A stretch of DNA of 64,000 nucleotides from Haliotis rufescens (GCF_023055435.1 NW_025964235.1:930001-994000); one strand, 5' to 3'. Positions 457 to 54,786 are shown, numbered from the stretch's first letter. The notes: generated by a model not told the origin, from the sequence alone. Made by a program: numbers and translations.

Positions 457-2376
457 TTATTTCCTTTGGATATCATACACACATACACGATCCTTTCCCG
501 CAACACATAGCAGACCCTTGTCAGTAGTAACAAGGCACTTGGGGTTTTTCAAGCCGTCAGATGTGGTTCTGTACTGTAGAACACTCTCACCACTTTTATT
601 GTACGCACGCAGACCTCCCCAGATATAGTCAGCTACAAATATTGTTCCATCCTCTACCACACAAGTGCCATTTGGTTTCCAGCCAGGACTAGAGCCCCGC
701 CATCTTAATCTTCCTTTGGCGGATAAAATGGTGACACTCCCGCTTCCCCATTCACTGAGGATGATGTCCGCTGACGGACTGAGCGACAGAGCCGCAAGGG
801 GAAAATGTACCTGAAAGTAAACAAATGTTCGCTGAGTTCCATCCAAATTATAGAGATAAAGTCCTTTCACTCCAGGAATATTTCCCACAACATACCCAAC
901 TCTCTCAGAAGCAGCAAGGCAATATGTGAAGCATTGACTTTCATCGGGTTTCTCTTTATCAACTTGGATCTTCTCCTTTAGACACCCAGATGCTGTTATC
1001 AACCAAAGACAGTTTCCACTGATGGCTCGTATCTCATCCCCAGCAGCAGAAACAGCAAATGGATTAAATCCCTCAAAGATGATTTCTCGCTGTAAGTCAC
1101 CACGAGTGTTCAGGACTTTAAGCTTCTTGTTGGCTCTATCTGAGAGTATCAGTCCGATCCTAGAGCTGTAGGTCATATCTTTGATGTCAGGTTTTTTCAT
1201 ATCATGTTTTGACTTCCCACTGAAGACACTTCTCAGTGCAGGTGTGGTGTATATGCTCTTCTGGGAAGTTCCATGAGTTAACACAACATCCGATGATTTG
1301 CCACCTTTTGGGGAACTTATCTGAGAAACAACTTGACAGTGCTTTTCTTGCTCAACCTGGTTTGGTCTAATCCCAGGCAGCAGGCTCTGTATTGTCTGTA
1401 GTCTCTCTATGATCACTGTTTCCAGCATCACCACTTCATAGTCCTTGCCCTTCTCTAGGATGCGCCCACAGAAGTCAACACAACTGCTTGCCACAGCTTT
1501 CTGGCACACAACCTTCTCCAACTTGCTCTCCTGTTCCTTTACTGCAAATTTCCAGTCATCATTAACTTTTTTCAATAACTCACATTTTCTGGCATTTATT
1601 ACAGCAATTTCTTGTTGAGCGTTATCTTCAATTAAACGTTTCTTTGCTTCCTTTTTCGCTTTGCCTGCTTTTACCAAGGACAATATATTCTGCTCTTGAA
1701 CCTTTATTGTTGTCATGTCTTCTCTAATGGTTTCCACCAAACACTTCATTGTTGATTGGAGCTGGTGTGCAGCTTCAGCTATTGGTTGAATGGTATGACC
1801 CTTGTGACCAATTACAACACATGATATGCAGGCCGGCTGACAGCACGATTGACAAAGGTACACCACATCTTTTTCCTTGTGGTGCTGGCAGGGAATCCTC
1901 TGCAACTGTCTAAGTTTTGCGTCATATTTCCCTTGTCTGATTTCTATCAGAGGTACTGTCTGGTGGTGGAGTGTTAGAGAGGAAGCAGTGTGCCCACCAG
2001 AACAGGAGGAACAGAGGTAATCTCCACAGTGTAGACATCTCCTTAATGCTGGTGAGACACTGTTATGTAGACCACATGGTGTGCATTCATCCTTCTTCAC
2101 TGCCTTAAATTCGACCAGCCGTGTGAGTCCACTGATAAAGACATTTTGGTTGAGGCAACTTGTCTCTTCTGGAAAGGGTTCCCGACACTGGGGGCAGAGT
2201 GCAGGGCTGTTGCCAGACTGACATGATTCCATACAGGTGGATATGCACTTGAAACAGAACGTATGCAGGCAAGGTAGGATTCTGGGATCTTTGAACACCT
2301 CGAGGCAGACACCACAAGTCAGAAAATCATCTCGATGTGTATTGACGACCGATTGATCTGGTACTGAGGCTGCCAT
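457..2376 (-). CDS. TRIM-family E3 ubiquitin ligase (RING-Bbox1-Bbox2-coiled coil-NHL-like propeller), paralog 1, 639 aa, single coding exon
   Basis: C3HC4 RING (CGVC..LPCLHTFCFKC..CPQC), B-box1 (CTPC..CLHC..CSSC..H..H), B-box2 (CQHH..CQSC..CISC..H..H), K/E/Q-rich coiled coil, C-terminal repeats such as SDRANKKLKV and PNGTCVVEDGTIFVADY. Kozak context ACCATGG; splice acceptor 5 nt upstream of the ATG. Confidence 0.93.
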   Translation of the reverse strand: MAASVPDQSVVNTHRDDFLTCGVCLEVFKDPRILPCLHTFCFKCISTCMESCQSGNSPALCPQCREPFPEETSCLNQNVFISGLTRLVEFKAVKKDECTPCGLHNSVSPALRRCLHCGDYLCSSCSGGHTASSLTLHHQTVPLIEIRQGKYDAKLRQLQRIPCQHHKEKDVVYLCQSCCQPACISCVVIGHKGHTIQPIAEAAHQLQSTMKCLVETIREDMTTIKVQEQNILSLVKAGKAKKEAKKRLIEDNAQQEIAVINARKCELLKKVNDDWKFAVKEQESKLEKVVCQKAVASSCVDFCGRILEKGKDYEVVMLETVIIERLQTIQSLLPGIRPNQVEQEKHCQVVSQISSPKGGKSSDVVLTHGTSQKSIYTTPALRSVFSGKSKHDMKKPDIKDMTYSSRIGLILSDRANKKLKVLNTRGDLQREIIFEGFNPFAVSAAGDEIRAISGNCLWLITASGCLKEKIQVDKEKPDESQCFTYCLAASERVGYVVGNIPGVKGLYLYNLDGTQRTFVYFQVHFPLAALSLSPSADIILSEWGSGSVTILSAKGRLRWRGSSPGWKPNGTCVVEDGTIFVADYIWGGLRAYNKSGESVLQYRTTSDGLKNPKCLVTTDKGLLCVAGKDRVCVYDIQRK

Positions 2377-2426
2377 GGTAGCTTAAAATACAAACAAAGC
2401 ACATTGAACCATTTTACATCTACTTT

Positions 2427-2600: not shown

Positions 2601-2684
2601 CCACGTTATGTGCACTATTTGTACACTACAGTGTTTTCGGGACGACCACCTTCGTATAACGTGGCGGATCTTTACACATTCAAT

Positions 2685-7084: not shown

Positions 7085-9043
7085 TCATATTCGATAAACA
7101 TTCACAATTCCCTTCTTATCACTAACAAACAGGAGCCCATCTTCATCAACAGCTACATAAGATGGATTCATTAAGCCATCACACGCAGTGCTGTGATCTA
7201 TAGTGTTTGTACCATCAGGGCTGTAGACGCACACACCACCCCAGTCATAATCCGCTACAAAAATAGTTCCATGAGTAGAGACACAGTTTCCATTTGGGTT
7301 CCAACCAGATTCATATTTCTCACTCCGCCATTTGTCAAGACCTTCCTTAGACAGTAATCTCAGACTGCCACTTCCCCATTCACTGATGACTACGTCCCCT
7401 GCTGGAGTGACTGAGAGAGATGCGAGGGGAGGTCTCGTGCGGCAGTTGACGTACCTGGTGAAGGTGCCGTCCAGGCCATACAGCCGGAGTCTGTTGTCAC
7501 CAGGAGTATTACCAACCACGAATCCCACGTGTTCTGCTGCAGCGAGACTGTAAGTGAAGGGAAGACTTTCATATGTTTTATTTTTATTCAACTGTATTCT
7601 GGTCTTCATTCTACCTTCTGATGTGAAGATGAGTAGGAAATTCTCACTGACAGATCCAATGATGTTACCGGCAACAGCAACATCAAATGGTTCAAACATG
7701 TCACACGTGATTTCTCGACGTAATTCCCCATTGGAATTGAAGACTTTTATTTTTTTATTGGCTAAGTCTGACAGGACAAGTCCAATATTTAAACCATATG
7801 CCATTCCTTTGATGTCAGGCATCTTCAAATCAGATTTATTTCTTGTATTAAACTTTCTCTGAAATTTGAGCACGCTCTTTTTTGCAGTGCCTTTCGATTC
7901 AAGTTGACCACGAACAGCAGTTTGAGAATTATGATTGCCATCATGCGTCTCTTCTGACTTCAGGTAACTGGTTACTTGTTTGTTCGTGTAAGCCTCATCA
8001 TTTTCGACCATCCTGTCATCCTGTTGAAGAATGTTCTCAGAAAGCAACCTTTGGTCTTTAAGTTGTTGCAGCCTCCTAGTCACCATGGGTTCCATCATCA
8101 TCAACTCAGCATCTTTGGCCTTCTCCAGGATGTGGTCACAGAAGTCCACGCAGCTGCCCATCACACCCTTCTGTTGCAACACTTTCTGCAGCATGGTTTC
8201 CTGTTCCTTCTGGTCAGCTTCCATTTCATCTGTCAGCTTTTTCAATGAAACACTTTTCCTTGAATGTACTTCGTCAATCTCACGTTTTGCATTTTGTTTA
8301 ATAAGTCGTTCCTTTATTTCTTTCTTCGATTCGAGATCATTGTTCAAAGATAACAGTTCATTTTCTTGTTTTGAAATCTCCTGAAAATCTTCATGAACAG
8401 CTTGAACCTTTTCCTTAATCACGGACCTAATGCACTGTACAGCTTCTGCGATCGGCTGCATGCGGTGGTCCCTGTGGCTGATCAGAACACAGGATATACA
8501 ATGAGGCTGAGAGCAGGTTTGACAGAAGTATTCCACATGCTTGTCCTGGTGCTGCTGGCACATGACTTTCTGCAACTCTCTGAGCCTTGTATCGTGTTTT
8601 CCTTCTTGTAGGTCGACGAGAGTAACAATCTGGTGTCCCAGTGTTTGCGAGGAAGCATTGTGACCTAGAGAGCAAGCTGAACAAAGGAAATCGCCACAGT
8701 CGAGACATTTTCTCTCTGCTCTGGAGGTTTTGTCACGCAGACTGCAAGGGGTGCATTTACACACTGTGGAAGTTCTACATTTCACTAACTCTGTGAGGCC
8801 ATTAATAAAATAGTTGCTTTTTGCAAAACCGTTTTCTTCAGGAAAGGGTTCACGGCACTCTGGACAGAGCAGGGGTCTGTGAGAAGACTTCAAAGATTTA
8901 GTATGGATGCATAGGCACTTGAAACAAAAAGTATGGAGGCAAGGCAGGATTCTGGGATCTGTGAACACCTCGAGGCAGATACCACAGGTCAGGAAGTCAT
9001 CTTGCAGAGAATCAGTCACTGACTGACATGGTAATGCAGCCAT
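7085..9043 (-). CDS. TRIM-family E3 ligase paralog 2, 652 aa from MAALPCQ (ORF-track start at 9082 probably intronic)
   Basis: Same domain order and motifs (DFLTCGICLEVFTDPRILPCLHTFC; SEWGSGS; GTIFVADYDWGG). The ATG at 9043 aligns with the starts of the other paralogs and follows ttattttcAG|agatc. Confidence 0.92.
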   Translation of the reverse strand: MAALPCQSVTDSLQDDFLTCGICLEVFTDPRILPCLHTFCFKCLCIHTKSLKSSHRPLLCPECREPFPEENGFAKSNYFINGLTELVKCRTSTVCKCTPCSLRDKTSRAERKCLDCGDFLCSACSLGHNASSQTLGHQIVTLVDLQEGKHDTRLRELQKVMCQQHQDKHVEYFCQTCSQPHCISCVLISHRDHRMQPIAEAVQCIRSVIKEKVQAVHEDFQEISKQENELLSLNNDLESKKEIKERLIKQNAKREIDEVHSRKSVSLKKLTDEMEADQKEQETMLQKVLQQKGVMGSCVDFCDHILEKAKDAELMMMEPMVTRRLQQLKDQRLLSENILQQDDRMVENDEAYTNKQVTSYLKSEETHDGNHNSQTAVRGQLESKGTAKKSVLKFQRKFNTRNKSDLKMPDIKGMAYGLNIGLVLSDLANKKIKVFNSNGELRREITCDMFEPFDVAVAGNIIGSVSENFLLIFTSEGRMKTRIQLNKNKTYESLPFTYSLAAAEHVGFVVGNTPGDNRLRLYGLDGTFTRYVNCRTRPPLASLSVTPAGDVVISEWGSGSLRLLSKEGLDKWRSEKYESGWNPNGNCVSTHGTIFVADYDWGGVCVYSPDGTNTIDHSTACDGLMNPSYVAVDEDGLLFVSDKKGIVNVYRI

Positions 9044-9404
9044 GATCTCTGAAAATAAGGAACGTTCCTGAAGAACATGCAACAGTATATTTTTGTATAT
9101 TTATATTGAACAAAAAGTTCAAATGTGAAATGTCTTTGCAGTTTGACCCTTGACACGTCTTTGTCCATGCCAACATGCATGCTTTCAAAGAAAACCTGAC
9201 ACAGTAAATAACAGCACAATAATGTGTATTAAGGAAAGCATTTGTCACTTAACGTGGTGACCATAGATATCGTTACACCACTATCTGTAAAAGGTCAGGA
9301 CAATTTGTCAAAATTGAAAGCGAATGTCACTTTGAATTAAGTGAGAAAACAAAATGTGAAATGATGGACTTTTGAAATTTTGGGACATGACATTTAGACA
9401 AGAA

Positions 9405-9660
9405 TTACCCATCCCCATGGGCACCAATCCTGCTCCCCTCCTTACTATTTCTTTATGCAAATGAGAAATTCAGGTATATCAATTCTTCTTTATTCCGAGC
9501 AATATTCCAGCTTTTTGAGGTATAGTGAAGCATGCTCCTTCTACGAAGATTCCAAATAGAGTAATATGACTTATCAAAAGTTGTTTGATCAGGGTTACAT
9601 CATTCAAGGCCTGATTAAGGCTTTCAAAAGTGTTACAGTAGACATGTGGAAGACATTGAC
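9405..9660 (+). pseudogene. Decayed Penelope-like reverse transcriptase fragment
   Basis: IPMGTNPAPLL..FLYANEKFRY..SNIPA..QGY resembles PLE RT motifs GIPMGTNCAP and FRYIDD. Confidence 0.65.
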
Positions 9661-10254
9661 CCATCAGTGGGGACGGATTCATTAATATATGCTCATGATT
9701 CATTTGGAATCGTACGTCGACTTTGCTTTTGGCAAATATTCCATATTCCATATATTCCTCTAAAGTTATGGCATCAAGTACTGATTAATAAAGACATGTT
9801 CACTGCACATACAGTGGGCTCAGTGAGCTAAACTATAAGCTACGCACAACGCATGCTACTCATTTACAGCAGCCCACAGAAATCAAAACTGTTATATTTT
9901 TCAGCCCTAGAACACCTTTCATAAATGAACCTTTTGACACAGTCTAGTAGACTTTGACTAAATACTAATATTCCCCATCGAACATGTAATTGGTAGCTTA
10001 TGAAACTCCAGTGACAGCTGACCTCAGTGAGTTAAAGTACTGGTCACATAATGGTCTACATATGGCTTAAAGGATCGTATGAATGTAAATTGAAGACGTC
10101 AACGCCGGAGAATATCTGTGTAATCACATTCCATTTTGGGTAAAAGGGAAATTCAGGTTCAGAAGTAAAAGGCAGACTAGGTAACAGAATGAAAGAAATG
10201 TGGCTGTAAGCATGTACAAAGTCAAAGGTTGTGGGGTCTTTCACCAGCTCTTAC

Positions 10255-11490: not shown

Positions 11491-11689
11491 CTGTGGACTT
11501 TGAACCACGCACGTCAAGTTTCTTAAGAAGAATTTGTGTTACAGAAACAGACATATCTGATGTAATCAAGAGTCTCCATGTAAACAAGACACGTGGGACA
11601 CAAATTATTAATATGTATTACAGATTCAATCAGCAAACCATTTTGTCTATTGTTTAGTAAATCAGTGTCAACTGGTCTGTATGCTCCAT

Positions 11690-11842
11690 GTGGAAAGAGG
11701 CCATTGTAATGTCACTTAACAAGAAAGGTAACAGAACGCTTGCGTCTAACTATCGTCCAGTGTCGCTAATTGTTTGCACGATAATTGAAAAAGTAGTTTT
11801 AAAGTATATGTCCAATTACTTTCTTGATATGAGATAACTTAA
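11690..11842 (+). pseudogene. CR1/L2-type LINE ORF2 fragment (N-terminal RT)
   Basis: WKEAIVMSLNKKGNRTLASNYRPVSL..IEKVV. Confidence 0.8.
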
Positions 11843-11849
11843 AGGATAA

Positions 11850-19036: not shown

Positions 19037-21290
19037 GTGTTTATAGGAAGTACAACATCCTTCAACGAGCTTATCGATCTTTTATCTTTTGATTTCAATC
19101 TTGCCCTCGAAAAAATTGTTAATGTTGTCCTTTGTGCCGCTGACTGTATGAAGGTACCTTTTGTTAAAAGTTCACCCCGAAATACGGGGTTTTATAATAG
19201 TGAATGCAGACGAGCAAAACGGGAGGCAAGGCGATACATGAGGAAATTCAAAGAGATGAAATCTAACGAAAATGAGTTAATCTTTTGTAAAATGAGAAAC
19301 AAGTATAAACATGTTTGCAGAACAGCAAAATCAAATTATCAATTTATGACACGAACAAAACTAAAGCTATCTCTATCTGATTCAACCACATTTTGGAAAG
19401 AGTTACGGAGTATATCAGGTCGTAGGGAAACAAAGAATAACATAAGTAAAGAGTGCTGGTTTGATCATTTTACAAACGTTTTTCAGTGTACAGATGTATT
19501 ACATGCTGAAGTCGAATGTCAATGTCATGAAGATTTTATACTTTATGAGATTGACCAGTGTATTTTGGAGTCGCCCATTACCGACTCAGAAATCCACAAG
19601 GCTATACATCGTTTAAAGAATGGCAAATCCCCTGGTGTTGATGACGTGGTCATTGAAATGTTAAAATGTTGTGAAAATGTAATAACTCCTTTCCTACGAA
19701 ATTTGTTCAATAAGTTATTTGATTCTGGATTATTTCCTGAGAACTGGACGAAAGCTATCATCCTTCCACTACATAAGAAAGGTAACAAAAACTTAAGTGT
19801 CTTAAACTCTAGACTTACAATCTGGGCTAATATAAGAAGTAAACTACCCGAGACACAAGCAGGGTTTAGACAGGGATATTCTCCTGCTGATCACATATTC
19901 ACGTTGAATGCAATTGTTAACAAATGTTTATCGAAAAGAAAATGGAAATTATACGTTGCTTTTGTGGATTTTAAAAAAGCGTTTGATTCAGTAAATCACC
20001 TTAAGCTATGGGAGTGTCTGAACGATGTAGGCTTGGGTGGAAAGATGATGAGAGCACTTAAGGGAATCTATGCCTCCGTGAAAGCGTGTGTGAGATGTAA
20101 TGATAACATTTATACAGAATATTTTGATTGTCCTAACGGAGTTAAACAAGCCCTCTATTATTTTCCTGTTTCATCAATCAACTGTCAAATGATGTTTCAT
20201 CACATGGGAAACACGGCGTACAACTATTTCCAGACTTGTTTGAAATATTATTATTATTGTTTGCCGATGATGTTATTCTTGTCTCTGACACAGCAACTGG
20301 TTTACAGAACCAACTTAATATTCTTGAAAAGTTTGCAGATTCACACGGATTAACGGTAAATTTAGATAAAACGAGTGTTGTTGTATTTAGACGAGGAGGG
20401 CGGTTATCTGTTCATGAGAAATGGTTCTATAAAGGCAATCGCCAACTCCTACAGATATCTTGGGTTTGTATTCTTATATACATCAAAGATGAACCAGTGT
20501 GTTTCAGATCTAGCATCAAGGGGTAAATCGAGCTTTAATGGAAATATTTCGCAATCTACGGAAGATTGGTTTTGTTGACACTTCAGTTTTCTATAAAATA
20601 TTTGATACTCAGATTCAACCTATTCTTTTACATGGTGCGGAAATGTGGGGTGTAGAAAAATTAGAACAAGTGCATATTATGGCTTGTAAGAAGTTTCTTA
20701 ACGTTGGTTTGCAAACTCCAAATGCTATTGTGTATGCGGTCAGTACATGTAAATGCTATGTGTCGTTCTGTAAAGTATAGGCTAAAAGTGATTAAAATGG
20801 ACGAAGATGGGATACCAAGAAAATCTTGTAATACGCTTGTATATAACGACAAGTGTGGTCGTCATAACTATGCTTCTTCTATTCGTTCCATATTATTTTC
20901 TCACGGATTCGGAGTAGTTTGGCTCAGTCATGCTGTTGGCGACAACATGAATAGTTTTTAAAACGTTTTGATAAATATGTTCTACCAATCATGGAATAGT
21001 ACTATCAAGGCTAGTTCTAGGTACATCCTGTATAAAGAGTTTAAAAGTATCCTGGAAAAAGAAAAATTCCTTTCTATTATTACTGAAATAGAGTATCGCA
21101 ATGTTATGATAAGTCTTAGAGCCGGGCTACTAAGACTTAAGGTAAACGAAGGTAGATGGGCTGACATTGATTTACGCTTACGGCTCTGCCCCATATGTAA
21201 AACAAGTACAGAGAATGAATATCATTTTACTTTAGAATGTGAATATTACAACGATATTAGACAACTGTATTTACAAACAACTTTTTGCCA
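19037..21290 (+). pseudogene. Frameshifted non-LTR retrotransposon ORF2 (RTEX/L2-like reverse transcriptase)
   Basis: KSPGVD, PLHKKG, QAGFR, DHIFTL, AFVDFKKAFDSV, GVKQ, LLFADD, YRYLG, QPILLHGAEMWG and C-terminal CPIC..ENEYHF..C spread over several frames. Confidence 0.9.
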
Positions 21291-21467
21291 CAATATAACG
21301 AACTCCGGTTCCAACGAACTAAAATTAGTGGTCCATTTAGGTCGTTATAACCGCAGTTTACTGTTATGACAGTCAACAAGCAATGGCCTTGACATCTCTG
21401 CAAACGTCATACCTTCATAACAGCAGTTGTGCCAGAGACGAAGGTTGTCGGACATATGTACACACAC

Positions 21468-22334: not shown

Positions 22335-22357
22335 ACACACACTCAACCACCCGGGCC

Positions 22358-27920: not shown

Positions 27921-28280
27921 TCCGGAAAATTATATATTCATTAAGATTAACTTCTGGTCCTGATCGCAAATAACATAAATTTACAAACTTGCTTTACAGA
28001 ATCATTTGTAATCAGTATAACGCCATGAAGGGATGCGTAAAAACCCAGGAAGAATGTGAGAAATCTGTTGTCGAAATAGGAAATTCCATATGCAACAGAT
28101 ATAACAGAACTATTTTTACCACCAATATTTCCCTTTCCTTGAAATCCACTGTCAATGAACAATCCCGAGCTACTTAAAAATGCTGATGTGTATATTCGCC
28201 ACGTTGTTCTCAAGAAAACATTCCACTGATAATATGAATAAAATGGAGCTTAATGCTTCTCAACTGTTTGCTTCATAGCT

Positions 28281-30197
28281 TCATACGGTGTATTTATTTA
28301 TCCCATCTTTAGCATCAATCACATACAGTGATCCCTCCTCATCGAAAGCAACATGACTGGGACAATGCAGCCCATCACGTTTTGTTTTGTACTGAAGACA
28401 TTTTTTACCACTTGAGCTATAAACGCGGACTCCTCCCAAATGGTAGTCCGCAGCGAAAATGGTTCCATCACGTGACACACAAGTCCCATTGGGTTTCCAC
28501 CCAGTATCATATTCCCTACTGCTCCACCTGTCCTTCCCTCCACTTGATAGGACTCTTAGACTTCCACTTCCCCATTCACTCATGACTATATCCCCTTCAG
28601 GGGTGACTGACAGAGACGCCAGGGGGAACCGGATGCTGCAGTCTAAATACTTCTTCAGCGTGCCATCCAGGTTGTAGACGTGAAATCTTTTGTCACCAGG
28701 AATATTGCCAACCACAATCCCAACATCGTCAGACGCAGCTAGACTGTATGTGAAGGGTAGACCTTCATCTGGTTTATTCTTGTTCAGTTTGACCTTTGTT
28801 CGTAGATGACCCTTTAAAGTGAAAATACACAAATAATTCTCACTGACCACAGCAATGATGTCCCCAGCAACAGCAATTGCACGGGGATAGAATCCATCCA
28901 CGGTGATTTCTTGTTTCAACTTACCACAAGAGTTGATCATCTTGACCTTTTTATTGGCTAGATCTGATATCAACAGCCCAGCACCGAAACTGTATGCCGT
29001 TCCTTTGATGTTAGGGTTCTTTGTATCACCTTTAAATTTTGCAGAAAATGTTCTTTGGAATTTCATATTGTATCTCGATGGAATAGATATGGTCTGTGAT
29101 ACACTGGCTTCACTCTGTGTTGTCTGCTTTTTGTCCTGTTTCTCGTTCTGTTCATCATCCTTTGCAACAGTCAATGCATCCGTCTTGTGAATAGCCATGG
29201 CATGTCCTTTGAGCTGTTGGAGTCTGTCCACAATGGTCGTCTTCAGCATCAGTAACTCGTCATCCTTGCCTGTCTCCAGGATGCTGTCACAGAAGTCAAC
29301 ACAACTGCCAATCCTATTTTTCTGTTGCGAGAGTTCTTGTAACATGGTGTTGTGTTCCTTCTCTATTTCTTTCGTTTCAGTGGAAAGTTTTCTCAGTGAA
29401 TCGTGTTGTCTGCTTTTTATTATGGCAATTTCTCGTTCCGCAGTTTCTTCAATGCGAGATGTTTTTAATTCTCTCTTTTTTTTTAATGCTTTTGTCAAAG
29501 ATAAGATACTCATTTCTTGTTTGGAAACTTCCTTGAATTCTTTGCGAATGATCTCAACCTTAGACTTCATCATTGACTTCAAAAAGCTTACAGCTTCTGT
29601 GATAGGTTGAGTGTTGTGGTCCTTGTGGAGAAAAATAACGCATGCTATACAGACTGGTAAATGACAAGATTGGCAAAAGTATTCCACATCTTTGTCCTGG
29701 TGCTGTTGACATTGAATTCTCTGTAACTGTCTGAACGTTTCATCATGCAGTCCTTCCCTGAGGTCTCCTAAAGAAACAATCTGATGGCCATGTGTTTGGG
29801 TTGAAGCATTGTGTCCATCGGAACAGTCTGTACAGAGGCCATCGCCGCAGTTGAGACACTTCATTTCTGCTGGGGAGGATCGTCCTTTCAACCCACATGG
29901 CGTGCATTGCATTGACTTGGCTGTCTTAGATCTTACAAGTTCAGCGAGTCCATTGATGAAGAAATTATTCTTGAAGGAATCTGCCTCAACTGAAATTGGT
30001 TCTCGACACTCTGGACAGAGTGCTGGTCTTTGTTCAGACTGATGTGACTCTGTGCGCGCGCATATGCACCTAAAGCAGAAGGAATGGAGGCAGGGCAGGA
30101 TTCTGGCATCTGTGATCAATTCTTGACAGATGCCACAAGTCAGGAAGTCATTGTGGTGTAAATCAACAACTGATCGATCTGGTAACGTTCCGGCCAT
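28281..30197 (-). CDS. TRIM-family E3 ligase paralog 3 (unit A), 638 aa
   Basis: Intact ORF with RING, two B-boxes, coiled coil and NHL-like repeats; acceptor tttctttttttcAG|ccaagATG. Confidence 0.93.
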   Translation of the reverse strand: MAGTLPDRSVVDLHHNDFLTCGICQELITDARILPCLHSFCFRCICARTESHQSEQRPALCPECREPISVEADSFKNNFFINGLAELVRSKTAKSMQCTPCGLKGRSSPAEMKCLNCGDGLCTDCSDGHNASTQTHGHQIVSLGDLREGLHDETFRQLQRIQCQQHQDKDVEYFCQSCHLPVCIACVIFLHKDHNTQPITEAVSFLKSMMKSKVEIIRKEFKEVSKQEMSILSLTKALKKKRELKTSRIEETAEREIAIIKSRQHDSLRKLSTETKEIEKEHNTMLQELSQQKNRIGSCVDFCDSILETGKDDELLMLKTTIVDRLQQLKGHAMAIHKTDALTVAKDDEQNEKQDKKQTTQSEASVSQTISIPSRYNMKFQRTFSAKFKGDTKNPNIKGTAYSFGAGLLISDLANKKVKMINSCGKLKQEITVDGFYPRAIAVAGDIIAVVSENYLCIFTLKGHLRTKVKLNKNKPDEGLPFTYSLAASDDVGIVVGNIPGDKRFHVYNLDGTLKKYLDCSIRFPLASLSVTPEGDIVMSEWGSGSLRVLSSGGKDRWSSREYDTGWKPNGTCVSRDGTIFAADYHLGGVRVYSSSGKKCLQYKTKRDGLHCPSHVAFDEEGSLYVIDAKDGINKYTV

Positions 30198-31081
30198 CTT
30201 GGCTGAAAAAAAGAAACATATTTCAATAGAAAGTTGTCTCTATGATGTCAGACTGAAATATTAAGAGACATTGTTTGTGGTCATTGTGGATTGGTTTGGT
30301 ATATACTGGCGGGAAAGAGTATCTGCTTCATATACAGTGGTGTAAATGCTACGTTATTTAAAAAAAACACCAAAAACCCAAATATCATATTTGGTCATTT
30401 GTCTGATCAAAGTATTATCAAAACCCATACCAGGTAACAGAAGACAGAGGGACACGCCCCAAAATAGTGGTAGTGATACAACTTAATTAACAATGTCAAT
30501 ATCGGATCTGACCACCACTTGCGTTGATACATGCGAGGCAGCGGCAGTGTACTGAATACACCAAATGATTAAAAACAGCCTGGGTGATGTTGTTCGAAGT
30601 GCCAACCAAATATTGGCCCATCTGAGTGGGCCCTCACTGGCTGGTTCTGATCTTGTCGTAGGCGTCAATCCATCTCATCCCAGGCATGTACAAAGTGGGG
30701 GAGAGGTCTGGAGGAACATCCGACCATGACAGTACAGCAATGTCATGCTGCCTCAAAAAGCCTATTACAACATGTGCAAAACATGGGCGGGCATTATCCT
30801 GCTACAACGAGACGCTACGTCCCTACATTTGCACAAACGGTAGGACGGTGCATTGATAGATGCATTCAGAATAAATATATTTTTATGAAGCACAGTTTCT
30901 TTTTTTCCGTCAGTATATTTACTATTGTGTTCAGACAGACTCTTAATAAGGAGTGTGCGTGTCTGCAACCAAATCAAAAACCAGCATTTCACTTTTACAG
31001 GTCAGACTTAACTCATACCAACATATAAGATGAGTGAGCATAAGATATATGGATGAACAACTTCTTTATTACAATAAGAAA

Positions 31082-31119
31082 CAACGTTTCGGTGTAGGTT
31101 CTAACACCGTTATCAAGCA
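31082..31119 (-). ncRNA. Penelope-type minimal hammerhead-like motif (same sequence in C 55671-55708; 11-nt deletion in B near 42575)
   Basis: Minus strand GC UUGAUAA C GGUGU-uagaaccu-ACACC GAAAC GUU G, followed by AAUAAA; stem I is weak. Confidence 0.45.
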
Positions 31120-32191
31120 AGTGAGTATAGTTGACAAGTATATATACAGGTTGCAGGCAGTTTTTATACAGTAGAGTAGATATCAGATGTAGATAATAGA
31201 GTAGATATCAGATGTAGATGATAGAGTAGATATCAGATGTAGCTACACTGGAGTGGAGAAGCTTGTTATGTACATCTTATCCTTAGTACTCAAACTTCAA
31301 TACCTCAAAGAAACATATAAGATGGTTGTCAGCAAGACTCTTGGTAGGGTATTGCTTTCCTTATATACAGCGTATACACGACAGAATTTGGGATTCCTGA
31401 CCAATAATTCACCAATTTTGGTTTTTGAGTGAGTTAGTCCGTCATCTCGGTTTAATGCCGGGCTGAAAAGTATTTTAGTTAGCAAGGCGTTTCAGTTGAC
31501 AAGCCAAGGGACATGATTAGGTTGAAGTTGGGATTTCAATGGACCCTTGCGTGGCAAAGACAGACACCCCGCTGAGAGAATTGCGTTGCCACAGAGACAT
31601 GCGTAGGGGTGTTTCCATGGGGAGCGTCTCCGACCCACCTCCACACTATTGACTATAGTGTGTGTTGCACAGCTCTGTTGACTGTTATGAAGCCTCCAGA
31701 CAGAAGTGTGCAATATCCACCATCATAAATCCATCTCATGTTACGTACAAAGTAACATGTTACGTACCCAGTAACATGTATATACATGTCACNNNNNNNN
31801 NNNNNNNNNNNNNNNNNNNNNNNNNNNNNNNNNNNNNNNNNNNNNNNNNNNNNNNNNNNNNNNNNNNNNNNNNNNNNNNNNNNNNNNNNNNNNNNNNNNN
31901 NNNNNNNNNNNNNNNNNNNNNNNNGACACACAGTCACACTACATGCATGTTCTCGCCTACCTGCTCCATCGATCGTCCTAACATAAGGGATACGTCGAAA
32001 ACTCTTACTCTGAAGGCGGCTGATACGTGACTAGGCAGTCACGTGACTATGCTGTTGCATTATGTGCTTTGATACAATCAGACTAACTAGAGAGATAGTA
32101 ACTAGCGAGATAAATTAGAGATTTTACAATGGTAACACATGAATACACAATGCCATTATGAATACACAATGCCATTTAGAAAGTGGTCAAA

Positions 32192-33595: not shown

Positions 33596-33619
33596 TAGAC
33601 TGAAACTGACATTTCTACA

Positions 33620-34135
33620 ATCACTTACTTCGTCAAAGCTTAATCAGATGTCCTAGCGACATAATCACTTACCATTTACTTAGCAACATTAGATTTCCAC
33701 AACTCTACGACAGTGTTGATCAAGCTCATACCAGCTTCCCGGTTACTCTGCCGGTATCATTGCGATAGTTTTGAGAGCTCCGCCAACGGAGGAGGCTTGA
33801 GTGTAAACGTGTAATCACTTCCTGTAAGGGAGCANNNNNNNNNNNNNNNNNNNNNNNNNNNNNNNNNNNNNNNNNNNNNNNNNNNNNNNNNNNNNNNNNN
33901 NNNNNNNNNNNNNNNNNNNNNNNNNNNNNNNNNNNNNNNNNNNNNNNNNNNNNNNNNNNNNNNNNNNNNNNNNNNNNNNNNNNNAGTTTTAAAATATATA
34001 AAAAAACGAAAACTGTTTTCCTTGGACATTTGTCTGCGAGAAATAGCACATTATTTTTCCTACGCTGCGATGCAAATGTAATTTCTTCCAGTAAAGAAAG
34101 GAGCTTGATTATTTTTTCCCCATGAAAATCCCCTC
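33620..34135 (-). promoter_or_regulatory. Candidate non-coding exon 1 and promoter of the triplicated TRIM (unit B ~47390-48000, unit C ~57670-58126)
   Basis: Two minus-strand GTAAGT donors (33623-33628, 33667-33672), ETS-like CAGGAAGTG (33816-33824), IRF-like AAAACGAAAACT (34003-34014), kB-like GGGGATTTTC (34124-34133). Motif-level evidence only. Confidence 0.4.
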
Positions 34136-34199
34136 AATCCCATCCCTACTGAGAATCAAATGATTGCTCCCTAACTACATATATGACAGTTATTTTAAT

Positions 34200-50818: not shown

Positions 50819-52869
50819 GTATTTTATACTGACAACTGCCATTTATTGCCATTGAATATTGGACTACCACTCTATTGTTTATCGCCCTTGTAATCGCCGT
50901 GCAGTAATTTGTGTGGATATGTAAATTCAGTGAATTTGTGTTTCACACTAAGTTCATTTACGTACAGATTTCTGGATAAACATATTGTTTCAATTTGAGA
51001 ATCGACACGTAATAATAAGAATAGGAATTTCTGCTCTGATTGTCAAAACAAGGTAATTTGGCCAAGAAGTTAAAGTTCAGGTATATCGATGATCTGATAT
51101 CGTTAAATCCATCAATCAGCCAATACCCTTCCACTGAGTTACCCATCATAACTAGAAACCAGTGAGACTGCTGAATCTGTTTCATATTTAGATGTATGCA
51201 TGACATTTCAGAACCACAAAACACTCTCCACGAGGCTGCATGAATAGCGGGATGACTTCAACTTTCCCTTTATGGAAAGGGTATTGTCGCATTTATTTAT
51301 ATGATAAGCCCAATTACAGACGTTCGTGATGTGTTTCTCCAGGCTCTTCAAATATGACTCTCAAGCTGCTGCCGTCGTCACTTGGGCAGACAATACATTC
51401 ATCTATTTCCAGATTTGCAGCATACTCACGACCCGTAGACGCTGATTTACCGTGACATGGCGTAAGCGTTATTTGCGGTTAAACAAAACTGTTTCATGGG
51501 CACCTGATAGCTAAACAGTTATTGTGAGCTGTTCACATTAAAAAAACAACACGTGTGTGAGTATCATGGTCCGAAGAAGCACTCAATCATCTGGTCTAGA
51601 TTCGATTACTCACAGACTGCCGTCATATCTACTGCCGACAACACATATGGGAACTCGACAACACATATGGGAACTCGACAACACATATGGGAACTCGACA
51701 ACACATATGGGAACTCGACAACACATATGGGAACTCGAACAACACATATGGGAACTGGTGAAATGAAAATGAAGATGTAATGACAATAAATGTCTGTAAA
51801 ATTTATTTCGGGAGTGTAGATCAATATCTGTATCCACCATGTCGGGCGACACATGCACGACTCCTTGATGGTATACTGTTGATTAACTTGCACATGGTTG
51901 CCCTTGGTATTGGACGCCATTACGCCTGAAGAGCTGCCCAAACTGGGGTCAACGTATCGCTGCCCAGTCAGTTCGCTTGTCATGTGTGATACTGCCCCCA
52001 TACCGACCATGGTCAAGAATTGTTGCCCTGGCCAATCCCAATCTTTGCCGCCTGTGGTAAGCTGTAATGGTCACACCCTTCACAGGACGCCTTGCTTTCA
52101 GGCGGGCTGCACAGAGTCAGTTTTTATCTGTAGAATCGCATTCCTGTTATTGTACGGAATCCACTATTGACAGCAGATTTCAATCTATTGCGTGGCATAA
52201 TGTAATGAGACGATCTTATCCAGGTGTCGTATTTTTAGGCCTGCCACGTCCAGGTCTCATTGTAACCCTCTCCGTTTGACGGTACTTGTCTCACAGAAAT
52301 TACACATTTTTATTTGCCAAACATGTCATTCTCCTCATTGACATGTCATGCAAATCTCCTTAGTGACACGTCATGTCAATCTCCTCATTGACACATCATG
52401 TCAATGTCCTTAGTGACACATCATGTCAATCTCCTCATTGACACGTCATGCCAATCTCCTTAGTGACACGTCATGCCAATCTCCTCATTGACACGTCATG
52501 CCAATCTCCTTAGTGACACGTCATGCCAATCTCCTCATTGACACGTCATGTCAATCTCCTCATTGACACGTCATGTCAATCTCCTTAGTGACACGTCATG
52601 CCAATCTCCTCATTGACACGTCATGTCAAACTCCTCATTGACACGTCATGTCAATGTCCATAGTGACACGTCATGTCAATCTCTTTACTGACACGTCATG
52701 TCAATCTCCTTAGTGACACGTCATGTCAATCTCCTCATTGACACGTCATGCCAATCTCCTTAGTGACACGTCATGTCAATCTCCTTAGTGACACGTCACG
52801 TTGTTCTCAAGAAAACATTCCACTGATAATATGAATGAAATGGAGCTTAAAGCTTCTCAACTGTTTGCT

Positions 52870-54786
52870 TCATACGGTGTATTTATTTATCCTATCTTTA
52901 GCATCAATCACATAGAGTGATCCCTCCTCATCGAAAGCAACATGACTGGGATAATGCAGCCCATCACGTATTGTTTTGTACTGAAGACATTTTTTACCAC
53001 TTGAGCTATAAACGAGGACTCCTCCCCAATCGTAGTCCGCAACGAAAATGGTTCCATCACGTGACACACAAGTCCCATTGGGTTTCCACCCAGTATCATA
53101 TTCCCAACTGCTCCACCTGTCCTTCCCTCCACTTGATAGGACTCTTAGACTTCCACTTCCCCATTCACTCATGACTATATCCCCTTCAGGGGTGACGGAC
53201 AGGGACGCCAGGGGGAACCGGATGCTGCAGTCTATATACCTCTTCATCGTGCCCTCCAGGTTGTAGACGTGAAGTCTTTTGTCACCAGGAATATTGCCAA
53301 CCACAATCCCAACATCGTCAGACGCAGCTAGACTGTATGTGAAGGGTAGACCTTCGTCTGGTTTAGTCTTGTTCAGTTTGACCTTTGTTCGTAGATGACC
53401 CTTTAAAGTGAAAATACACAAATAATTCTCACTGACCACAACAATGATGTCCCCAGCAACAGCAATTGCACGGGGATAGAATCCATCCACGGTGATTTCT
53501 TGTTTCAACTTACCACAAGAGTTGATCATCTTGACCTTTCTATTGGCTAGATCTGATATCAACAGCCCAGCACCGAAACTGTATGCCGTTCCTTTGATGT
53601 TAGGGTTCTTTGTATCACCTTTAGATTTTGCAGAAAATGTTCTTTGGAATTTCATATTGTATCTTGATGGAATAGATCTGGTCTGTGCTTCACTGGCTTC
53701 ACTCTGTGTTGTCTGCTTTTTGTCCTGTTTCTCGTTCTGTTCATCATCCTTTGCAACAGTCAATGCATCCGTCTTGTGAATAGCCATGGCATGTCCTTTG
53801 AGCTGTTGGAGTCTGTCCATAATGGTCGTCTTCAGCATCAGTAACTCGTCATCCTTGCCTGTCTCCAGGATGCTGTCACAGAAGTCGACACAACTGCCAA
53901 TCCTATTTTTCTGTTGCGAGAGTTCTTGTAACATGGTGCTGTGTTCCTTCTCTATTTCTTTCATTTCAGTGGAAAGTTTTCTCAGTGAATCGTGTTGTCT
54001 GCTTTTTATTTTTGCAATTTCTCGTTCCGCATTTTCTTCAATGCGAGATGTCTCTAATTCTCTTTTTTGTTTTAATGCTTTTGTCAAAGATAAGATACTC
54101 ATTTCTTGTTTGGAAACTTCCTTGAATTCTTTGCGAATGATCTCAACCTTAGACTTCATCATTGACTTCAAATGGCTTACAGTTTCTGTGATAGGTTGAG
54201 TGTTGTGGTCCTTGTGGAGAAGAATAACGCATGCTATACAGACTGGTAAATGACAAGATTGGCAAAAGTATTCCACATCTTTGTCCTGGTGCTGTTGACA
54301 TTGAATTCTCTGTGACTTTCTGAACGTTTCATCATGCAGTCCTCCCCTGAGGTCTGCTACAGAAACAATCTGATGACAATGTGTTTGGGTTGAAGCATTG
54401 TGTCCATCGGAACAGTCTGTACAGAGGCCATCGCCGCAGTTGAGACACTTCATTTCTGCTGGGGAGGATCGTCCTTTCAACCCACATGGCGTGCATTGCA
54501 TTGACTTGGCTGTCTTAGATCTTACAAGTTCAGCGAGTCCATTGATGAAGAAATTATTCTTGAAGGAATCTGCCTCAACTGAAATTGGTTCTCGACACTC
54601 TGGACAGAGTGCTGGTCTTTGTTCAGACTGATGTGACTCTGTGCGCGCGCATATGCACCTAAAGCAGAAGGAATGGAGGCAGGGCAGGATTCTGGCATCT
54701 GTGATCAATTCTTGACAGATGCCACAAGTCAGGAAGTCATTGTGGTGTAAATCAACAACTGATCGATCTGGTAACGTTCCGGCCAT
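52870..54786 (-). CDS. TRIM-family E3 ligase paralog 5 (unit C), 638 aa
   Basis: Intact ORF colinear with paralogs 3 and 4; A-like RING, mostly B-like downstream. Confidence 0.93.
   Translation of the reverse strand: MAGTLPDRSVVDLHHNDFLTCGICQELITDARILPCLHSFCFRCICARTESHQSEQRPALCPECREPISVEADSFKNNFFINGLAELVRSKTAKSMQCTPCGLKGRSSPAEMKCLNCGDGLCTDCSDGHNASTQTHCHQIVSVADLRGGLHDETFRKSQRIQCQQHQDKDVEYFCQSCHLPVCIACVILLHKDHNTQPITETVSHLKSMMKSKVEIIRKEFKEVSKQEMSILSLTKALKQKRELETSRIEENAEREIAKIKSRQHDSLRKLSTEMKEIEKEHSTMLQELSQQKNRIGSCVDFCDSILETGKDDELLMLKTTIMDRLQQLKGHAMAIHKTDALTVAKDDEQNEKQDKKQTTQSEASEAQTRSIPSRYNMKFQRTFSAKSKGDTKNPNIKGTAYSFGAGLLISDLANRKVKMINSCGKLKQEITVDGFYPRAIAVAGDIIVVVSENYLCIFTLKGHLRTKVKLNKTKPDEGLPFTYSLAASDDVGIVVGNIPGDKRLHVYNLEGTMKRYIDCSIRFPLASLSVTPEGDIVMSEWGSGSLRVLSSGGKDRWSSWEYDTGWKPNGTCVSRDGTIFVADYDWGGVLVYSSSGKKCLQYKTIRDGLHYPSHVAFDEEGSLYVIDAKDRINKYTV

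What the first reader, a model, noticed from the sequence alone, without database searches (positions are those of the whole stretch)
457..54786. Five-gene cluster of single-coding-exon TRIM56-like ligases with two evolutionary ages: candidate expanding innate-immune array
Seen: five intact co-oriented ORFs of RING-B1-B2-CC-linker-propeller with no filamin domain; two diverged and three near-identical, all intact although the surrounding transposon ORFs are decayed. Established: vertebrate TRIM56 and TRIM32 combine RBCC with NHL-type repeats in one coding exon, TRIM56 is antiviral, and tandemly expanded TRIMs (TRIM5, finTRIMs) are restriction factors. Inference: a lineage-specific invertebrate array that uses an NHL-like propeller rather than PRY-SPRY as the recognition module.
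Basis: partly seen in the sequence, partly recalled or inferred. Interest (0 to 1): 0.75.

Follow-up and report, generated by a model that had tools for sequence, protein, structure and literature searches.

The report
Abalone TRIM-NHL ubiquitin-ligase gene cluster
Five intact ubiquitin-ligase genes of the TRIM-NHL kind lie in a row in an abalone genome, three of them recent near-identical copies that are transcribed as a group; this is an ordinary lineage-specific gene-family expansion, and its proposed immune role is untested.

Summary
Five co-oriented minus-strand ORFs of 638-652 aa encode RING, B-box1, B-box2, coiled coil, a short disordered linker and a six-bladed NHL propeller, with no filamin domain. 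None overlaps an N gap.

The genome is an abalone (Haliotis). RefSeq already calls these genes "TRIM56-like".

- **Ages:** three old lineages (T1, T2, T3-5) each have orthologs in other Haliotis species and show purifying selection (dN/dS about 0.2-0.27). T3, T4 and T5 are 97.5-97.9% identical copies inside an 11.5-13 kb tandem unit rich in minisatellites.
- **Young copies:** they have no indel in the CDS, against 9 indel events in the adjacent intron. Their amino-acid change is not distinguishable from neutral (47 nonsynonymous to 17 synonymous sites). The clustering of differences in the last blades is matched by synonymous sites, so there is no sign of diversifying selection.
- **Expression:** transcript contigs from four runs show spliced expression of the T3-5 group.
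- **Additions:** a sixth, broken member lies about 8.6 kb outside the window. Each young copy sits on its own gap-bounded block, so copy number rests on scaffolding.
- **Untested:** an immune role, and orthology to vertebrate TRIM56.

The scan had already noted another TRIM-NHL array elsewhere in this genome (s1-816315).

The parts
457..2376 (-). T1 coding exon (639 aa plus stop): RING, B-box1, B-box2, coiled coil, linker, NHL propeller
   Evidence: Ortholog in H. cracherodii is 94% identical (P0074).
2377..2383 (-). T1 splice acceptor: AG at 2383-2382, then 5 nt before the ATG
   Evidence: upstream sequence. The RefSeq isoform P0075 joins an upstream exon here in frame.
7085..9043 (-). T2 coding exon (652 aa plus stop), same architecture; acceptor AG 5 nt before the ATG at 9043
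   Evidence: P0003 (652 aa) is the window's own protein. Its H. cracherodii ortholog is P0071.
21412..21455 (-). Coding part of an upstream exon used by RefSeq isoform X1 of T1 (MSDNLRLWHNCCYE), followed by donor GTATGA. It lies upstream of T2.
   Evidence: Known from the RefSeq model only; not checked with reads.
19037..20353 (+). Truncated reverse-transcriptase ORF (retroelement fragment) beside an N gap
   Evidence: RVT_1 E=7.7e-9, profile positions 21-130 of 205.
28281..30197 (-). T3 coding exon (638 aa plus stop), young copy
33673..33698 (-). 3' end of the 5' exon of the T3 unit (homolog of 47442-47467)
   Evidence: (exact match of the transcript's loose end).
39747..41663 (-). T4 coding exon (638 aa plus stop), young copy; the exon starts at 41668 behind an AG acceptor
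   Evidence: Transcript contigs cover 39700-41669 and stop there.
47442..47467 (-). 3' end of the 5' exon of the T4 unit, followed by donor GTAAGT at 47441-47436
52870..54786 (-). T5 coding exon (638 aa plus stop), young copy
   Evidence: The transcript contig of run X5 carries mostly T5-type letters.
57722..57747 (-). 3' end of the 5' exon of the T5 unit
56490..56579 (-). Alternative upstream exon used by RefSeq model P0070, with homologs at 43341-43472 and 31961-32081
   Evidence: No contig lay on the T4 homolog.
28197..31704 (.). Core of the tandem duplication unit, matching 39663-43168 and 52794-56290 at 97.3-97.9%
44280..47365 (.). 33-bp G-rich minisatellite inside the 5' intron of T4. 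Shorter arrays lie at 32756-33596, with related sequence at 56731-57645. Its length differences account for part of the difference in unit length.
   Evidence: Part of it is translated in RefSeq model P0070.
38816..39667 (.). 25-bp minisatellite starting about 80 bp behind the T4 stop codon; also at 27341-27922 and 52322-52798

Best explanation
This is a small abalone-specific clade of TRIM-NHL RING E3 ubiquitin ligases. It belongs to Marin's subfamily C, the group that holds TRIM2/3/32/45/56/71.

**Inferred mechanism.** Each protein would work as TRIMs do. The RING recruits a charged E2. The B-boxes and the antiparallel coiled coil give a dimer. The six-bladed NHL propeller, on a roughly 45-residue disordered tether, selects the target, which may be a protein or an RNA.

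**Locus history.** An ancestral gene already had one coding exon and a splice acceptor 5 nt before the ATG. It duplicated in tandem before the abalone radiation into at least four lineages: T0 (now a pseudogene), T1, T2 and T3. The survivors were then kept under purifying selection as 1:1 orthologs. Around the time the window's species (red abalone, as inferred below) and H. cracherodii (black abalone) separated, an 11.5-13 kb unit holding T3 was triplicated. This probably happened by unequal crossing-over between its minisatellite-rich flanks, and the copies have since exchanged sequence.

**State of the young copies.** They are kept open and the group is transcribed and spliced. Their amino-acid changes accumulate at about the neutral rate.

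**Shown versus inferred.** Shown: domain architecture, fold, ages, selection regime, splicing and expression of the young group. Inferred: E3 activity, dimerisation, what the propeller binds, and the duplication mechanism.
For: **Architecture.**
- Pfam finds RING and two B-boxes in 5 of 5 proteins and no filamin.
- All 24 presumed zinc ligands are invariant in the five paralogs (the ligand pattern is recalled, not from a call).
- PDB sequence matches: TRIM3 B-box-coiled coil 3.3e-21, TRIM28 RBCC 2.8e-16, TRIM56 RING 2.7e-15, TRIM2 RING 1.1e-14, TRIM2/3 NHL 1e-11 to 3e-10.
- The AlphaFold2 model of T4 residues 340-638 has mean pLDDT 88 and 24 strands, which makes six blades. Residues 340-373 are below pLDDT 50.
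- The top Foldseek matches in the PDB are the NHL domains of TRIM2, TRIM3, TRIM71/LIN-41, Thin, Mei-P26 and Brat (E 1.6e-16 to 1e-12, TM 0.69-0.79).

**Lineage restriction.**
- In the window's own genome the clade is the five genes plus one broken copy. The next paralogs are 23-31% identical.
- Outside Haliotis the best matches are 30-36% identical: Gigantopelta and unnamed ENA proteins.

**Tree of 34 rows.**
- The Haliotis clade has support 100/100.
- Three orthogroups have support 100/100: T1 with H. cracherodii and H. rubra; T2 with H. cracherodii and H. asinina; T3-5 with H. cracherodii and H. asinina.

**Selection.**
- Old paralogs have dN/dS 0.20-0.27.
- Young copies have 0 indels in 1917 bp of CDS against 9 distinct indel events in about 1500 bp of adjacent intron. 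The chance of this under equal rates is P=6e-4.

**Sequence exchange.**
- The U3-U5 intron differs by 0.40% while the CDS differs by 2.45%.
- At 14 sites the H. cracherodii protein shares its residue with differing subsets of T3-5.

**Expression.**
- In 4 of 4 runs the contigs cover 39700-41669 and stop at the acceptor.
- They leave the intron bins 41732-41858, 41986-42112 and 42875-43500 empty in all four runs. Apart from a short high-depth element near 42500-42750, only one run touches each of the few other covered intron bins.
- In run X1 a contig continues in letters that match exactly the exon ending at 47442, before a GTAAGT donor.
Against: - No ubiquitination, binding or expression-pattern data exist for these proteins, so the mechanism is by homology only.
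- Pfam's NHL model reaches its cut-off in only 2 of 5 proteins.
- The grouping of T3, T4 and T5 to the exclusion of the H. cracherodii protein is weakly supported (92/67). The order of duplication and speciation is therefore open.
- Each young copy lies on its own gap-bounded block, so the number and order of units depend on scaffolding.
- Transcript contigs carry mixed T3-type and T5-type letters. Expression of each single copy, T4 above all, is not shown.
- Near-neutral change in the young copies is also what a mix of purifying and positive selection would give.
Confidence: 0.7

Rival explanations
1. First reader's reading. The array is an expanding innate-immune (antiviral) restriction or sensor system. 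New copies are retained because the NHL propeller diversifies to follow pathogens, as PRY-SPRY does in TRIM5 and the finTRIMs.
For: - There is a recent tandem triplication.
- Gene-wide dN/dS in the young copies is 0.55-1.0.
- Amino-acid differences are enriched in residues 505-638: 19 of 46, p=0.0014.
- The architecture equals that of antiviral, RNA-binding TRIM56 (passages of PMC11768893).
- A mussel transcript annotated TRIM56 rises after poly I:C (passages of PMC7773633).
Against: - Synonymous sites cluster in residues 505-638 in the same proportion: 7 of 17 against 19 of 47, Fisher p=1.0.
- The ratio of nonsynonymous to synonymous variable sites is 47:17 against a neutral 3.68:1, p=0.29.
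- Loops on the face classed as 'top' are not more variable than the rest: 9 of 77 against 15 of 182, p=0.48.
- The old lineages are stable 1:1 orthologs.
- No induction data could be obtained. The mussel and oyster genes are not orthologs of these.
Confidence: 0.25
2. The three near-identical copies are partly an assembly artefact: allelic or collapsed-repeat contigs scaffolded in tandem. On this reading the true locus has one or two T3-type genes.
For: - T3, T4 and T5 each sit on a separate block bounded by N gaps.
- Two gaps lie at homologous positions of successive units.
- The 2-2.5% divergence is in the range of allelic difference in a heterozygous marine invertebrate (recalled, not tested).
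- H. cracherodii RefSeq has a single protein in the 90% cluster.
Against: - There are three distinct sequences in one assembly, and a diploid has at most two alleles per locus.
- The units differ in minisatellite length and spacing (11,466 and 13,123 bp).
- No further copy lies elsewhere in the 615 contigs.
- Run X1 shows at least two forms side by side at 41221 and 41253.
Confidence: 0.15
3. The proteins are endogenous post-transcriptional regulators. On this reading the propeller binds cellular mRNAs, as in Brat, Mei-P26 and LIN-41, with roles in development or tissue homeostasis rather than defence.
For: - The closest solved folds include the RNA-binding NHL domains of LIN-41, Brat and Mei-P26.
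- The propeller carries net charge +5 to +8 in T1 and T3-5.
- Long-term purifying selection and 1:1 orthology fit a fixed ligand.
Against: - T2's propeller has net charge -2.
- The clade is confined to abalones and their near relatives, unlike the conserved developmental TRIM-NHLs.
- No surface electrostatics or RNA-binding residues could be examined.
- TRIM2 and TRIM3, the best structural matches, are known mainly for protein partners (passages of PMC9634614).
Confidence: 0.25

Closest known systems
Vertebrate TRIM56
   Same: - It has the same order of parts: RING, B-box1, B-box2, coiled coil, disordered region, C-terminal NHL(-like) propeller, and no filamin (passages of PMC11768893).
- Its RING is among the best PDB sequence matches (5jw7_B, E=2.7e-15).
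- RefSeq labels these genes 'TRIM56-like'.
   Different: - The linker here is about 45 residues, while human TRIM56 has 755 aa with a long disordered region.
- The propeller here is a clear NHL fold by structure search.
- The TRIM2 RING scores the same (1.1e-14).
- Sister clades are labelled TRIM45-like and TRIM2-like.
- Orthology could not be tested: no full-length vertebrate TRIM56 sequence was returned by any search.
- The antiviral function is unknown here.
TRIM32 / Drosophila Thin (Abba)
   Same: - It is an RBCC plus NHL protein without filamin.
- The Thin NHL is among the top structural matches (6xg7, E=1.5e-13).
- The single coding exon of TRIM32 is recalled, not checked here.
   Different: - TRIM32 has one B-box (recalled). 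The proteins here have B-box1 and B-box2.
- There is no evidence of orthology.
TRIM2 / TRIM3 / TRIM71 (class VII TRIM-NHL)
   Same: - They give the best sequence and fold matches for the B-box-coiled coil and the NHL.
- They belong to the same subfamily C in Marin 2012 (passages of PMC3503706).
   Different: - They carry a filamin/Ig domain before the NHL. Here there is no Pfam hit in 5 of 5 proteins and no room for one, with about 45 residues between coiled coil and propeller.
- In the tree the filamin-bearing proteins taken as outgroup did not form one clade: three cnidarian/ENA ones grouped apart, while the fourth (P0010) fell on a long branch inside the unresolved filamin-less group.
TRIM5 / finTRIM-type tandem immune arrays
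   Same: These are also recent tandem duplicates of a TRIM gene with a C-terminal recognition domain.
   Different: - Their recognition domain is PRY-SPRY, not NHL.
- Their hallmark, an excess of nonsynonymous change on the recognition surface, was tested here and not found.
Lophotrochozoan and echinoderm RBCC(-NHL) expansions, including another array in this same genome
   Same: - The nearest ESM-Atlas clusters are mollusc, brachiopod and echinoderm RBCC clusters of 50-159 members.
- The first look at the window's own genome gave 1035 candidates.
- B-box and RING orthogroups are among the families expanded in bivalves (table fragment of PMC8382680).
- The scan noted a larger TRIM-NHL array elsewhere in this genome (s1-816315).
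   Different: - This clade is small: five genes and one pseudogene.
- It is sequence-distinct, with at most 31% identity to other paralogs in the genome.
- It shows no fast-changing propeller face.

Membership tests
TRIM / RBCC family | N-terminal C3HC4 RING with all zinc ligands | tested here: met
   The Pfam RING models are above cut-off in 5 of 5. C21, C24, C36, H38, C41, C44, C61 and C64 are invariant in the five paralogs (ligand roles are assigned from the recalled pattern).
TRIM / RBCC family | One or two B-boxes directly after the RING | tested here: met
   zf-B_box matches two stretches in 5 of 5 (E 6e-9 to 1.7e-8). ANCHR-like B-box matches residues 97-140 in 4 of 5. The eight Cys/His of each box are invariant.
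TRIM / RBCC family | Coiled coil after the B-boxes | tested here: met
   Sequence matches run through the coiled coil of solved TRIMs: TRIM3 161-334 (3.3e-21), TRIM28 20-326 (2.8e-16), TRIM25 18-308 (2.1e-13). The full-length protein was not modelled.
TRIM-NHL (Marin subfamily C) | C-terminal six-bladed NHL beta-propeller | tested here: met
   The AlphaFold2 model has pLDDT 88 and 24 strands. The top Foldseek PDB matches are TRIM2/3/71, Thin, Mei-P26 and Brat NHL domains with probability 1.00. Pfam NHL reaches its cut-off in only 2 of 5.
Class VII TRIM-NHL in the strict sense (TRIM2/3/71) | Filamin/Ig domain between coiled coil and NHL | tested here: not met
   PF00630 is found in 0 of 5. Only about 45 residues, modelled as disordered, lie between the coiled coil and the first strand.
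Vertebrate TRIM56 orthogroup | Domain order RING-B1-B2-CC-disordered region-NHL-like | tested here: met
   compared with passages of PMC11768893.
Vertebrate TRIM56 orthogroup | Phylogenetic placement with vertebrate TRIM56 rather than TRIM2/3/32/45/71 | not testable with these tools
   No full-length vertebrate subfamily-C sequence was returned. The TRIM56 RING and the TRIM2 RING score alike. Related invertebrate clades carry three different '-like' names.
Vertebrate TRIM56 orthogroup | Virus- or interferon-type induction and antiviral activity | not testable with these tools
Diversifying immune TRIM arrays (TRIM5 / finTRIM type) | Recent tandem duplication | tested here: met
   Three units are 97-98% identical, subject to the scaffolding caveat.
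Diversifying immune TRIM arrays (TRIM5 / finTRIM type) | Excess nonsynonymous change concentrated on the recognition surface | tested here: not met
   The nonsynonymous to synonymous count is 47:17, not above neutral (p=0.29). Regional clustering is shared by synonymous sites (Fisher p=1.0). Loops on the face classed as 'top' do not differ from the rest (p=0.48). Power is low, with 64 variable sites.
Diversifying immune TRIM arrays (TRIM5 / finTRIM type) | Copy number differs between close species | tested here: inconclusive
   The 90% cluster holds one H. cracherodii RefSeq protein against three copies here. This rests on annotation only, and the tree support for a species-specific triplication is 92/67.

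The most novel reading that the evidence does not exclude
The locus may work as a cassette system. Complete TRIM-NHL coding exons all begin 5 nt before their ATG behind an acceptor in the same phase. They could therefore be spliced alternatively to upstream exons that lie beyond a neighbouring paralog.

Three annotation facts point this way:
- The RefSeq T1 isoform starts at an exon upstream of T2.
- The H. cracherodii T2 and T1 orthologs are annotated as isoforms X1 and X2 of one gene.
- A RefSeq model runs from T5 into T4.

If this is real, one promoter could give a choice among different propellers. Combined with the recent triplication, that would be a new way for an invertebrate to vary an RNA- or protein-recognising E3 ligase, possibly in defence.
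Probability: 0.1. Interest if true: 0.6.

Novelty: new member of a known kind. Interest (0 to 1): 0.3.

Why it matters
If the reading holds, this adds one well-delimited example to the known picture of large lineage-specific TRIM expansions in molluscs. It has four old lineages and one very young triplication.

- It is useful as a clean case for dating duplication, gene conversion and the early fate of TRIM duplicates.
- It is a caution on two counts. RefSeq's 'TRIM56-like' label is not an orthology statement. One RefSeq model (1756 aa) fuses two copies through a translated minisatellite.
- It would matter more if paralog-specific expression data showed induction by pathogens, or if the shared-upstream-exon models proved real.

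Tried and rejected
**Diversifying selection on the propeller.** I tested it three ways: pairwise dN/dS by domain, nonsynonymous against synonymous clustering, and top-loop against bottom-loop and strand classes taken from the model's secondary structure. None showed a signal. The loop classes are crude, because no coordinates were available to scripts.

**A super-conserved binding face.** I also tested for this and did not find it: invariant residues are 16 of 77 in loops classed as 'top' against 34 of 182 in the rest, p=0.73.

**Transposon ORFs around the genes.** Of eight intergenic ORFs scanned, one is a truncated reverse transcriptase, six have no Pfam match, and one (inside a 33-bp minisatellite) has only below-cut-off matches. 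The long ORFs at 10229-13413 are minisatellite by-products.

**Literature.**
- Searches for abalone with TRIM and NHL (6 papers), tripartite motif with mollusc, expansion and NHL (0 papers), TRIM56 with Haliotis (5 papers) and Haliotis with tripartite motif (17 papers) gave nothing on this cluster. I judged this from titles and abstract starts only.
- (TRIM-NHL, invertebrate) gave nothing useful.
- Supplementary tables of abalone challenge transcriptomes, which I could not see, may list these genes.

**Vertebrate TRIM56, TRIM32 and TRIM45.** I ran no further search on fetching these sequences. The first search returned none, and the word filter made success unlikely. Orthology therefore stayed untested.

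**T1 and T2.** Their expression and the shared upstream exon stayed unchecked, because the single read-laying run went to the T4 unit.

**DNA depth.** It was not examined, for the same reason.

Full report
**What is in the window**

One search lists 12 ORFs of at least 250 aa. Five of them are the co-oriented minus-strand ORFs of the finding:
- T1 at 457-2376
- T2 at 7085-9082, with its first ATG at 9043
- T3 at 28281-30197
- T4 at 39747-41663
- T5 at 52870-54786

They translate without interruption. The four N gaps (18821-18994, 31793-31924, 33835-33984, 47683-47856) touch none of them, so the question of frame across a gap does not arise for the coding sequences.

The gaps matter in another way. 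T3, T4 and T5 each lie on a separate gap-bounded block, and two gaps sit at homologous places of successive repeat units. The number and order of the young units therefore rest on scaffolding.

**Domain architecture**

Pfam gives these results:
- RING models are above cut-off in 5 of 5.
- B-box is found in two stretches in 5 of 5.
- NHL repeats are borderline, at 17.7-22.3 bits against a cut-off of 20. Two of 5 reach it.
- Filamin is found in 0 of 5.

The five proteins align end to end. All eight Cys/His of the RING and of each B-box are invariant; I assigned the ligand roles from the recalled consensus.

The PDB sequence search matches several solved TRIMs:
- TRIM3 B-box-coiled coil, 3.3e-21
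- TRIM28 RBCC, 2.8e-16
- TRIM56 RING, 2.7e-15
- TRIM2 RING, 1.1e-14
- TRIM2 and TRIM3 NHL domains, 1e-11 to 3e-10

An AlphaFold2 model of T4 residues 340-638, built on a 33-row alignment, has mean pLDDT 88 and pTM 0.84. It has 24 strands, which makes six four-stranded blades. Residues 340-373 are disordered.

Foldseek against the PDB puts the NHL domains of TRIM2, TRIM3, TRIM71/LIN-41, Thin, Mei-P26 and Brat on top (E 1.6e-16 to about 1e-12, TM 0.69-0.79). About 45 residues lie between coiled coil and propeller, which leaves no room for a filamin domain.

**Organism and annotation**

- The best database match is an H. cracherodii protein at 94% identity, named 'E3 ubiquitin-protein ligase TRIM56-like'.
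- Proteins identical to the window's ORFs sit on a 3,194,372-base contig. That is the length of the window's contig, and it also bears proteins named for Haliotis rufescens. I take the window to be from that species or a very close relative.
- One RefSeq model (P0070, 1756 aa, 'uncharacterized protein') is a chain. It joins an upstream exon at 56490-56579, all of T5, about 1.3 kb of a translated 33-bp minisatellite (44101-45432), and all of T4.

**Gene structure**

All five coding exons are preceded by a pyrimidine tract and an AG exactly 5 nt before the ATG.

Contigs of four runs were laid on 39700-43500. The runs are recorded only as 'RNA?'. In 4 of 4 runs:
- the contigs cover 39700-41669 and end at that acceptor;
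- intron bins 41732-41858, 41986-42112 and 42875-43500 are empty. Apart from a short high-depth element near 42500-42750, only one run touches each of the few other covered intron bins.

In run X1 the contig continues in 25 letters that match exactly at 33674-33698, 47443-47467 and 57723-57747. That is one place per repeat unit, each followed by a consensus donor; at T4 the junction reads G|GTAAGT at 47442/47441.

This pattern is what spliced RNA gives, so the T3-5 group is transcribed from a 5' exon 2.9-5.8 kb upstream of each coding exon.

The letters of the contigs are mostly T5-type in run X5: 13 T5-only, 14 shared by T3 and T5, and 1 T3-only, out of the 28 listed differences. They are mixed T3- and T5-type in the other runs. 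Thirty further rows were not shown. Expression of each single copy, T4 in particular, is therefore not shown.

**Upstream exon of T1**

RefSeq's longer T1 isoform (P0075) starts with 14 residues encoded at 21412-21455, followed by a GTATGA donor. That exon lies upstream of T2. In H. cracherodii the T2 and T1 orthologs are named isoforms X1 and X2 with consecutive accession numbers. I could not check this with reads.

**Extent of the clade**

In the window's own genome the protein search found the following:
- the five genes;
- three pieces of a sixth copy at C457:919546-921411;
- otherwise only paralogs of 23-31% identity.

In total there were 45 matches at E<=1e-10 and 1035 first-look candidates, of which 69 were scored.

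The sixth copy (T0) is broken into at least five frame pieces and carries a small internal duplication in the RING region. It is closest (50-62%) to an unnamed 672-aa protein, P0006.

The exhaustive representative search found 11,756 proteins at E<=0.001 but only 103 at E<=1e-30. After the abalone proteins, identity drops to 30-36%. Those named are from Gigantopelta ('TRIM56-like', 'TRIM45-like'), Pecten and Lingula ('TRIM2-like').

The ESM Atlas neighbours are mollusc, brachiopod and echinoderm RBCC clusters with a variety of '-like' names.

**Phylogeny**

The tree has 34 rows: the five window ORFs plus 29 proteins that I chose from the 230 held. It was built with LG+G4.
- The abalone clade has support 100/100.
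- Its sister group is Gigantopelta plus ENA proteins (100/99).
- Three orthogroups have support 100/100:
  - T1 with H. cracherodii and H. rubra
  - T2 with H. cracherodii and H. asinina
  - T3-5 with H. cracherodii and H. asinina
- T3, T4 and T5 group apart from the H. cracherodii protein with only 92/67 support.

At 14 sites that protein shares its residue with differing subsets of the three copies. The triplication is thus about as old as the split of those two species, but which came first is not resolved.

**The young units**

Self-comparison shows a core of about 3.5 kb at 97.3-97.9% identity: 28197-31704 matches 39663-43168 and 52794-56290. It lies within units spaced 11,466 and 13,123 bp apart.

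The rest of each unit is largely minisatellite:
- a 25-bp array about 80 bp behind each stop codon;
- a G-rich 33-bp array inside the 5' intron, far longer in the T4 unit;
- an AT-rich 33-bp array upstream.

Within the core the CDS has 0 indels in all three comparisons. The adjacent 1.5 kb of intron has 3, 6 and 9 pairwise indel events, which makes 9 distinct events. Under equal rates the chance of none in the CDS is 6e-4. The open frames have therefore been kept by selection.

The U3-U5 intron differs by only 0.40% while their CDS differs by 2.45%. Synonymous sites are included in that difference (dS 0.025). The copies are therefore mosaics, as gene conversion or unequal exchange would produce.

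**Selection**

Old paralogs have dN/dS 0.20-0.27, with dS near saturation.

Identity by domain shows that the propeller is no more diverged than the enzymatic half:

| Domain | Between paralogs | Between distant abalone species |
|---|---|---|
| NHL propeller | 49-57% | 74-78% |
| RING | 57-59% | 67-73% |
| B-boxes | 54-60% | not listed here |
| Coiled coil | 43-46% | 60-70% |

Among T3-5 there are 47 nonsynonymous and 17 synonymous variable sites. The neutral expectation is 3.68:1, and the difference is not significant (p=0.29).

Amino-acid differences are enriched in residues 505-638: 19 of 46, p=0.0014. However, synonymous sites show the same enrichment: 7 of 17, Fisher p=1.0. That points to regional differences in ancestry rather than selection on the protein.

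I classed propeller residues as strand, top loop or bottom loop from the model. The top loops are neither more variable (9 of 77 against 15 of 182, p=0.48) nor more invariant (p=0.73) than the rest.

With only 64 variable sites the power is low. Even so, nothing here shows a diversifying recognition surface.

**Comparison with what is known**

- Marin 2012 (PMC3503706, passages) places TRIM2, 3, 32, 45, 56 and 71 in one subfamily C. The varying RefSeq labels in this clade and its sisters all fall in that subfamily.
- Human TRIM56 has the same order of parts, with a longer disordered region. Its NHL-like domain binds RNA and host proteins (PMC11768893 and PMC9634614, passages).
- Genes annotated as TRIM in bivalves respond to poly I:C or are associated with herpesvirus resistance (PMC7773633 and PMC9437489, passages). 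B-box and RING orthogroups are expanded in bivalves (PMC8382680, table fragment). None of these is an ortholog of the genes here.
- The scan itself has already noted a much larger TRIM-NHL array elsewhere in this genome (s1-816315). I did not test that note.

**Verdict**

The genes are real, the young T3-5 group is expressed, and the genes are lineage-specific TRIM-NHL ligases. The label 'TRIM56-like' describes the architecture, not a tested orthology. The immune-array reading remains a hypothesis. The tests possible here do not support it, and induction data would be needed to decide.

Noticed in passing
window 44101-45432 (minus strand) and protein P0070: A 1756-aa RefSeq model chains T5 and T4 through part of the 33-bp G-rich minisatellite, translated as PPHTNPTLTAT-like repeats. 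It is probably an annotation artefact or a read-through transcript.
   Followed up: partly
window 10255-11411, 11846-13402, 17737-18232: Minisatellites of 51, 36 and 51 bp have periods divisible by three. This gives 380-520-aa ORFs on both strands that are not genes. The two 51-bp arrays are about 79% alike.
   Followed up: partly
L001 7546-9646 (G000:C457:919546-921646), minus strand: A sixth family member is broken into at least five frame pieces. The stretch after the RING's first half is tandemly duplicated (three similar ORF starts at 9264-9646). It is closest to the unnamed protein P0006 (50-62%).
   Followed up: partly
window 42506-42550: A stretch of about 45 nt in the T4 intron occurs inside many unrelated transcript contigs, at summed depths of 475-2175 in all four runs. 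It looks like a short dispersed repeat that is transcribed elsewhere.
   Followed up: no
window 47520-47682 (minus strand): A direct duplication of about 79 bp lies immediately upstream of the T4 5' exon and runs up to the N gap. It could be part of the promoter.
   Followed up: no
window 19037-20353: A truncated reverse-transcriptase ORF (RVT_1 profile positions 21-130 of 205) lies directly beside the N gap at 18821-18994.
   Followed up: partly
T3-5 against H. cracherodii P0001, residues 4-92: Ten of the 17 residues at which the H. cracherodii protein differs from all three window copies lie in the RING region. That region is 87-89% identical, against 94-97% elsewhere.
   Followed up: no
window 28281-30197 (T3): T3 alone carries changes in the otherwise conserved FVADYDWGG stretch (V582A, D586H, W587L) and L505F. 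T3 and T5 share P31A in the RING. This may be early decay of T3.
   Followed up: partly
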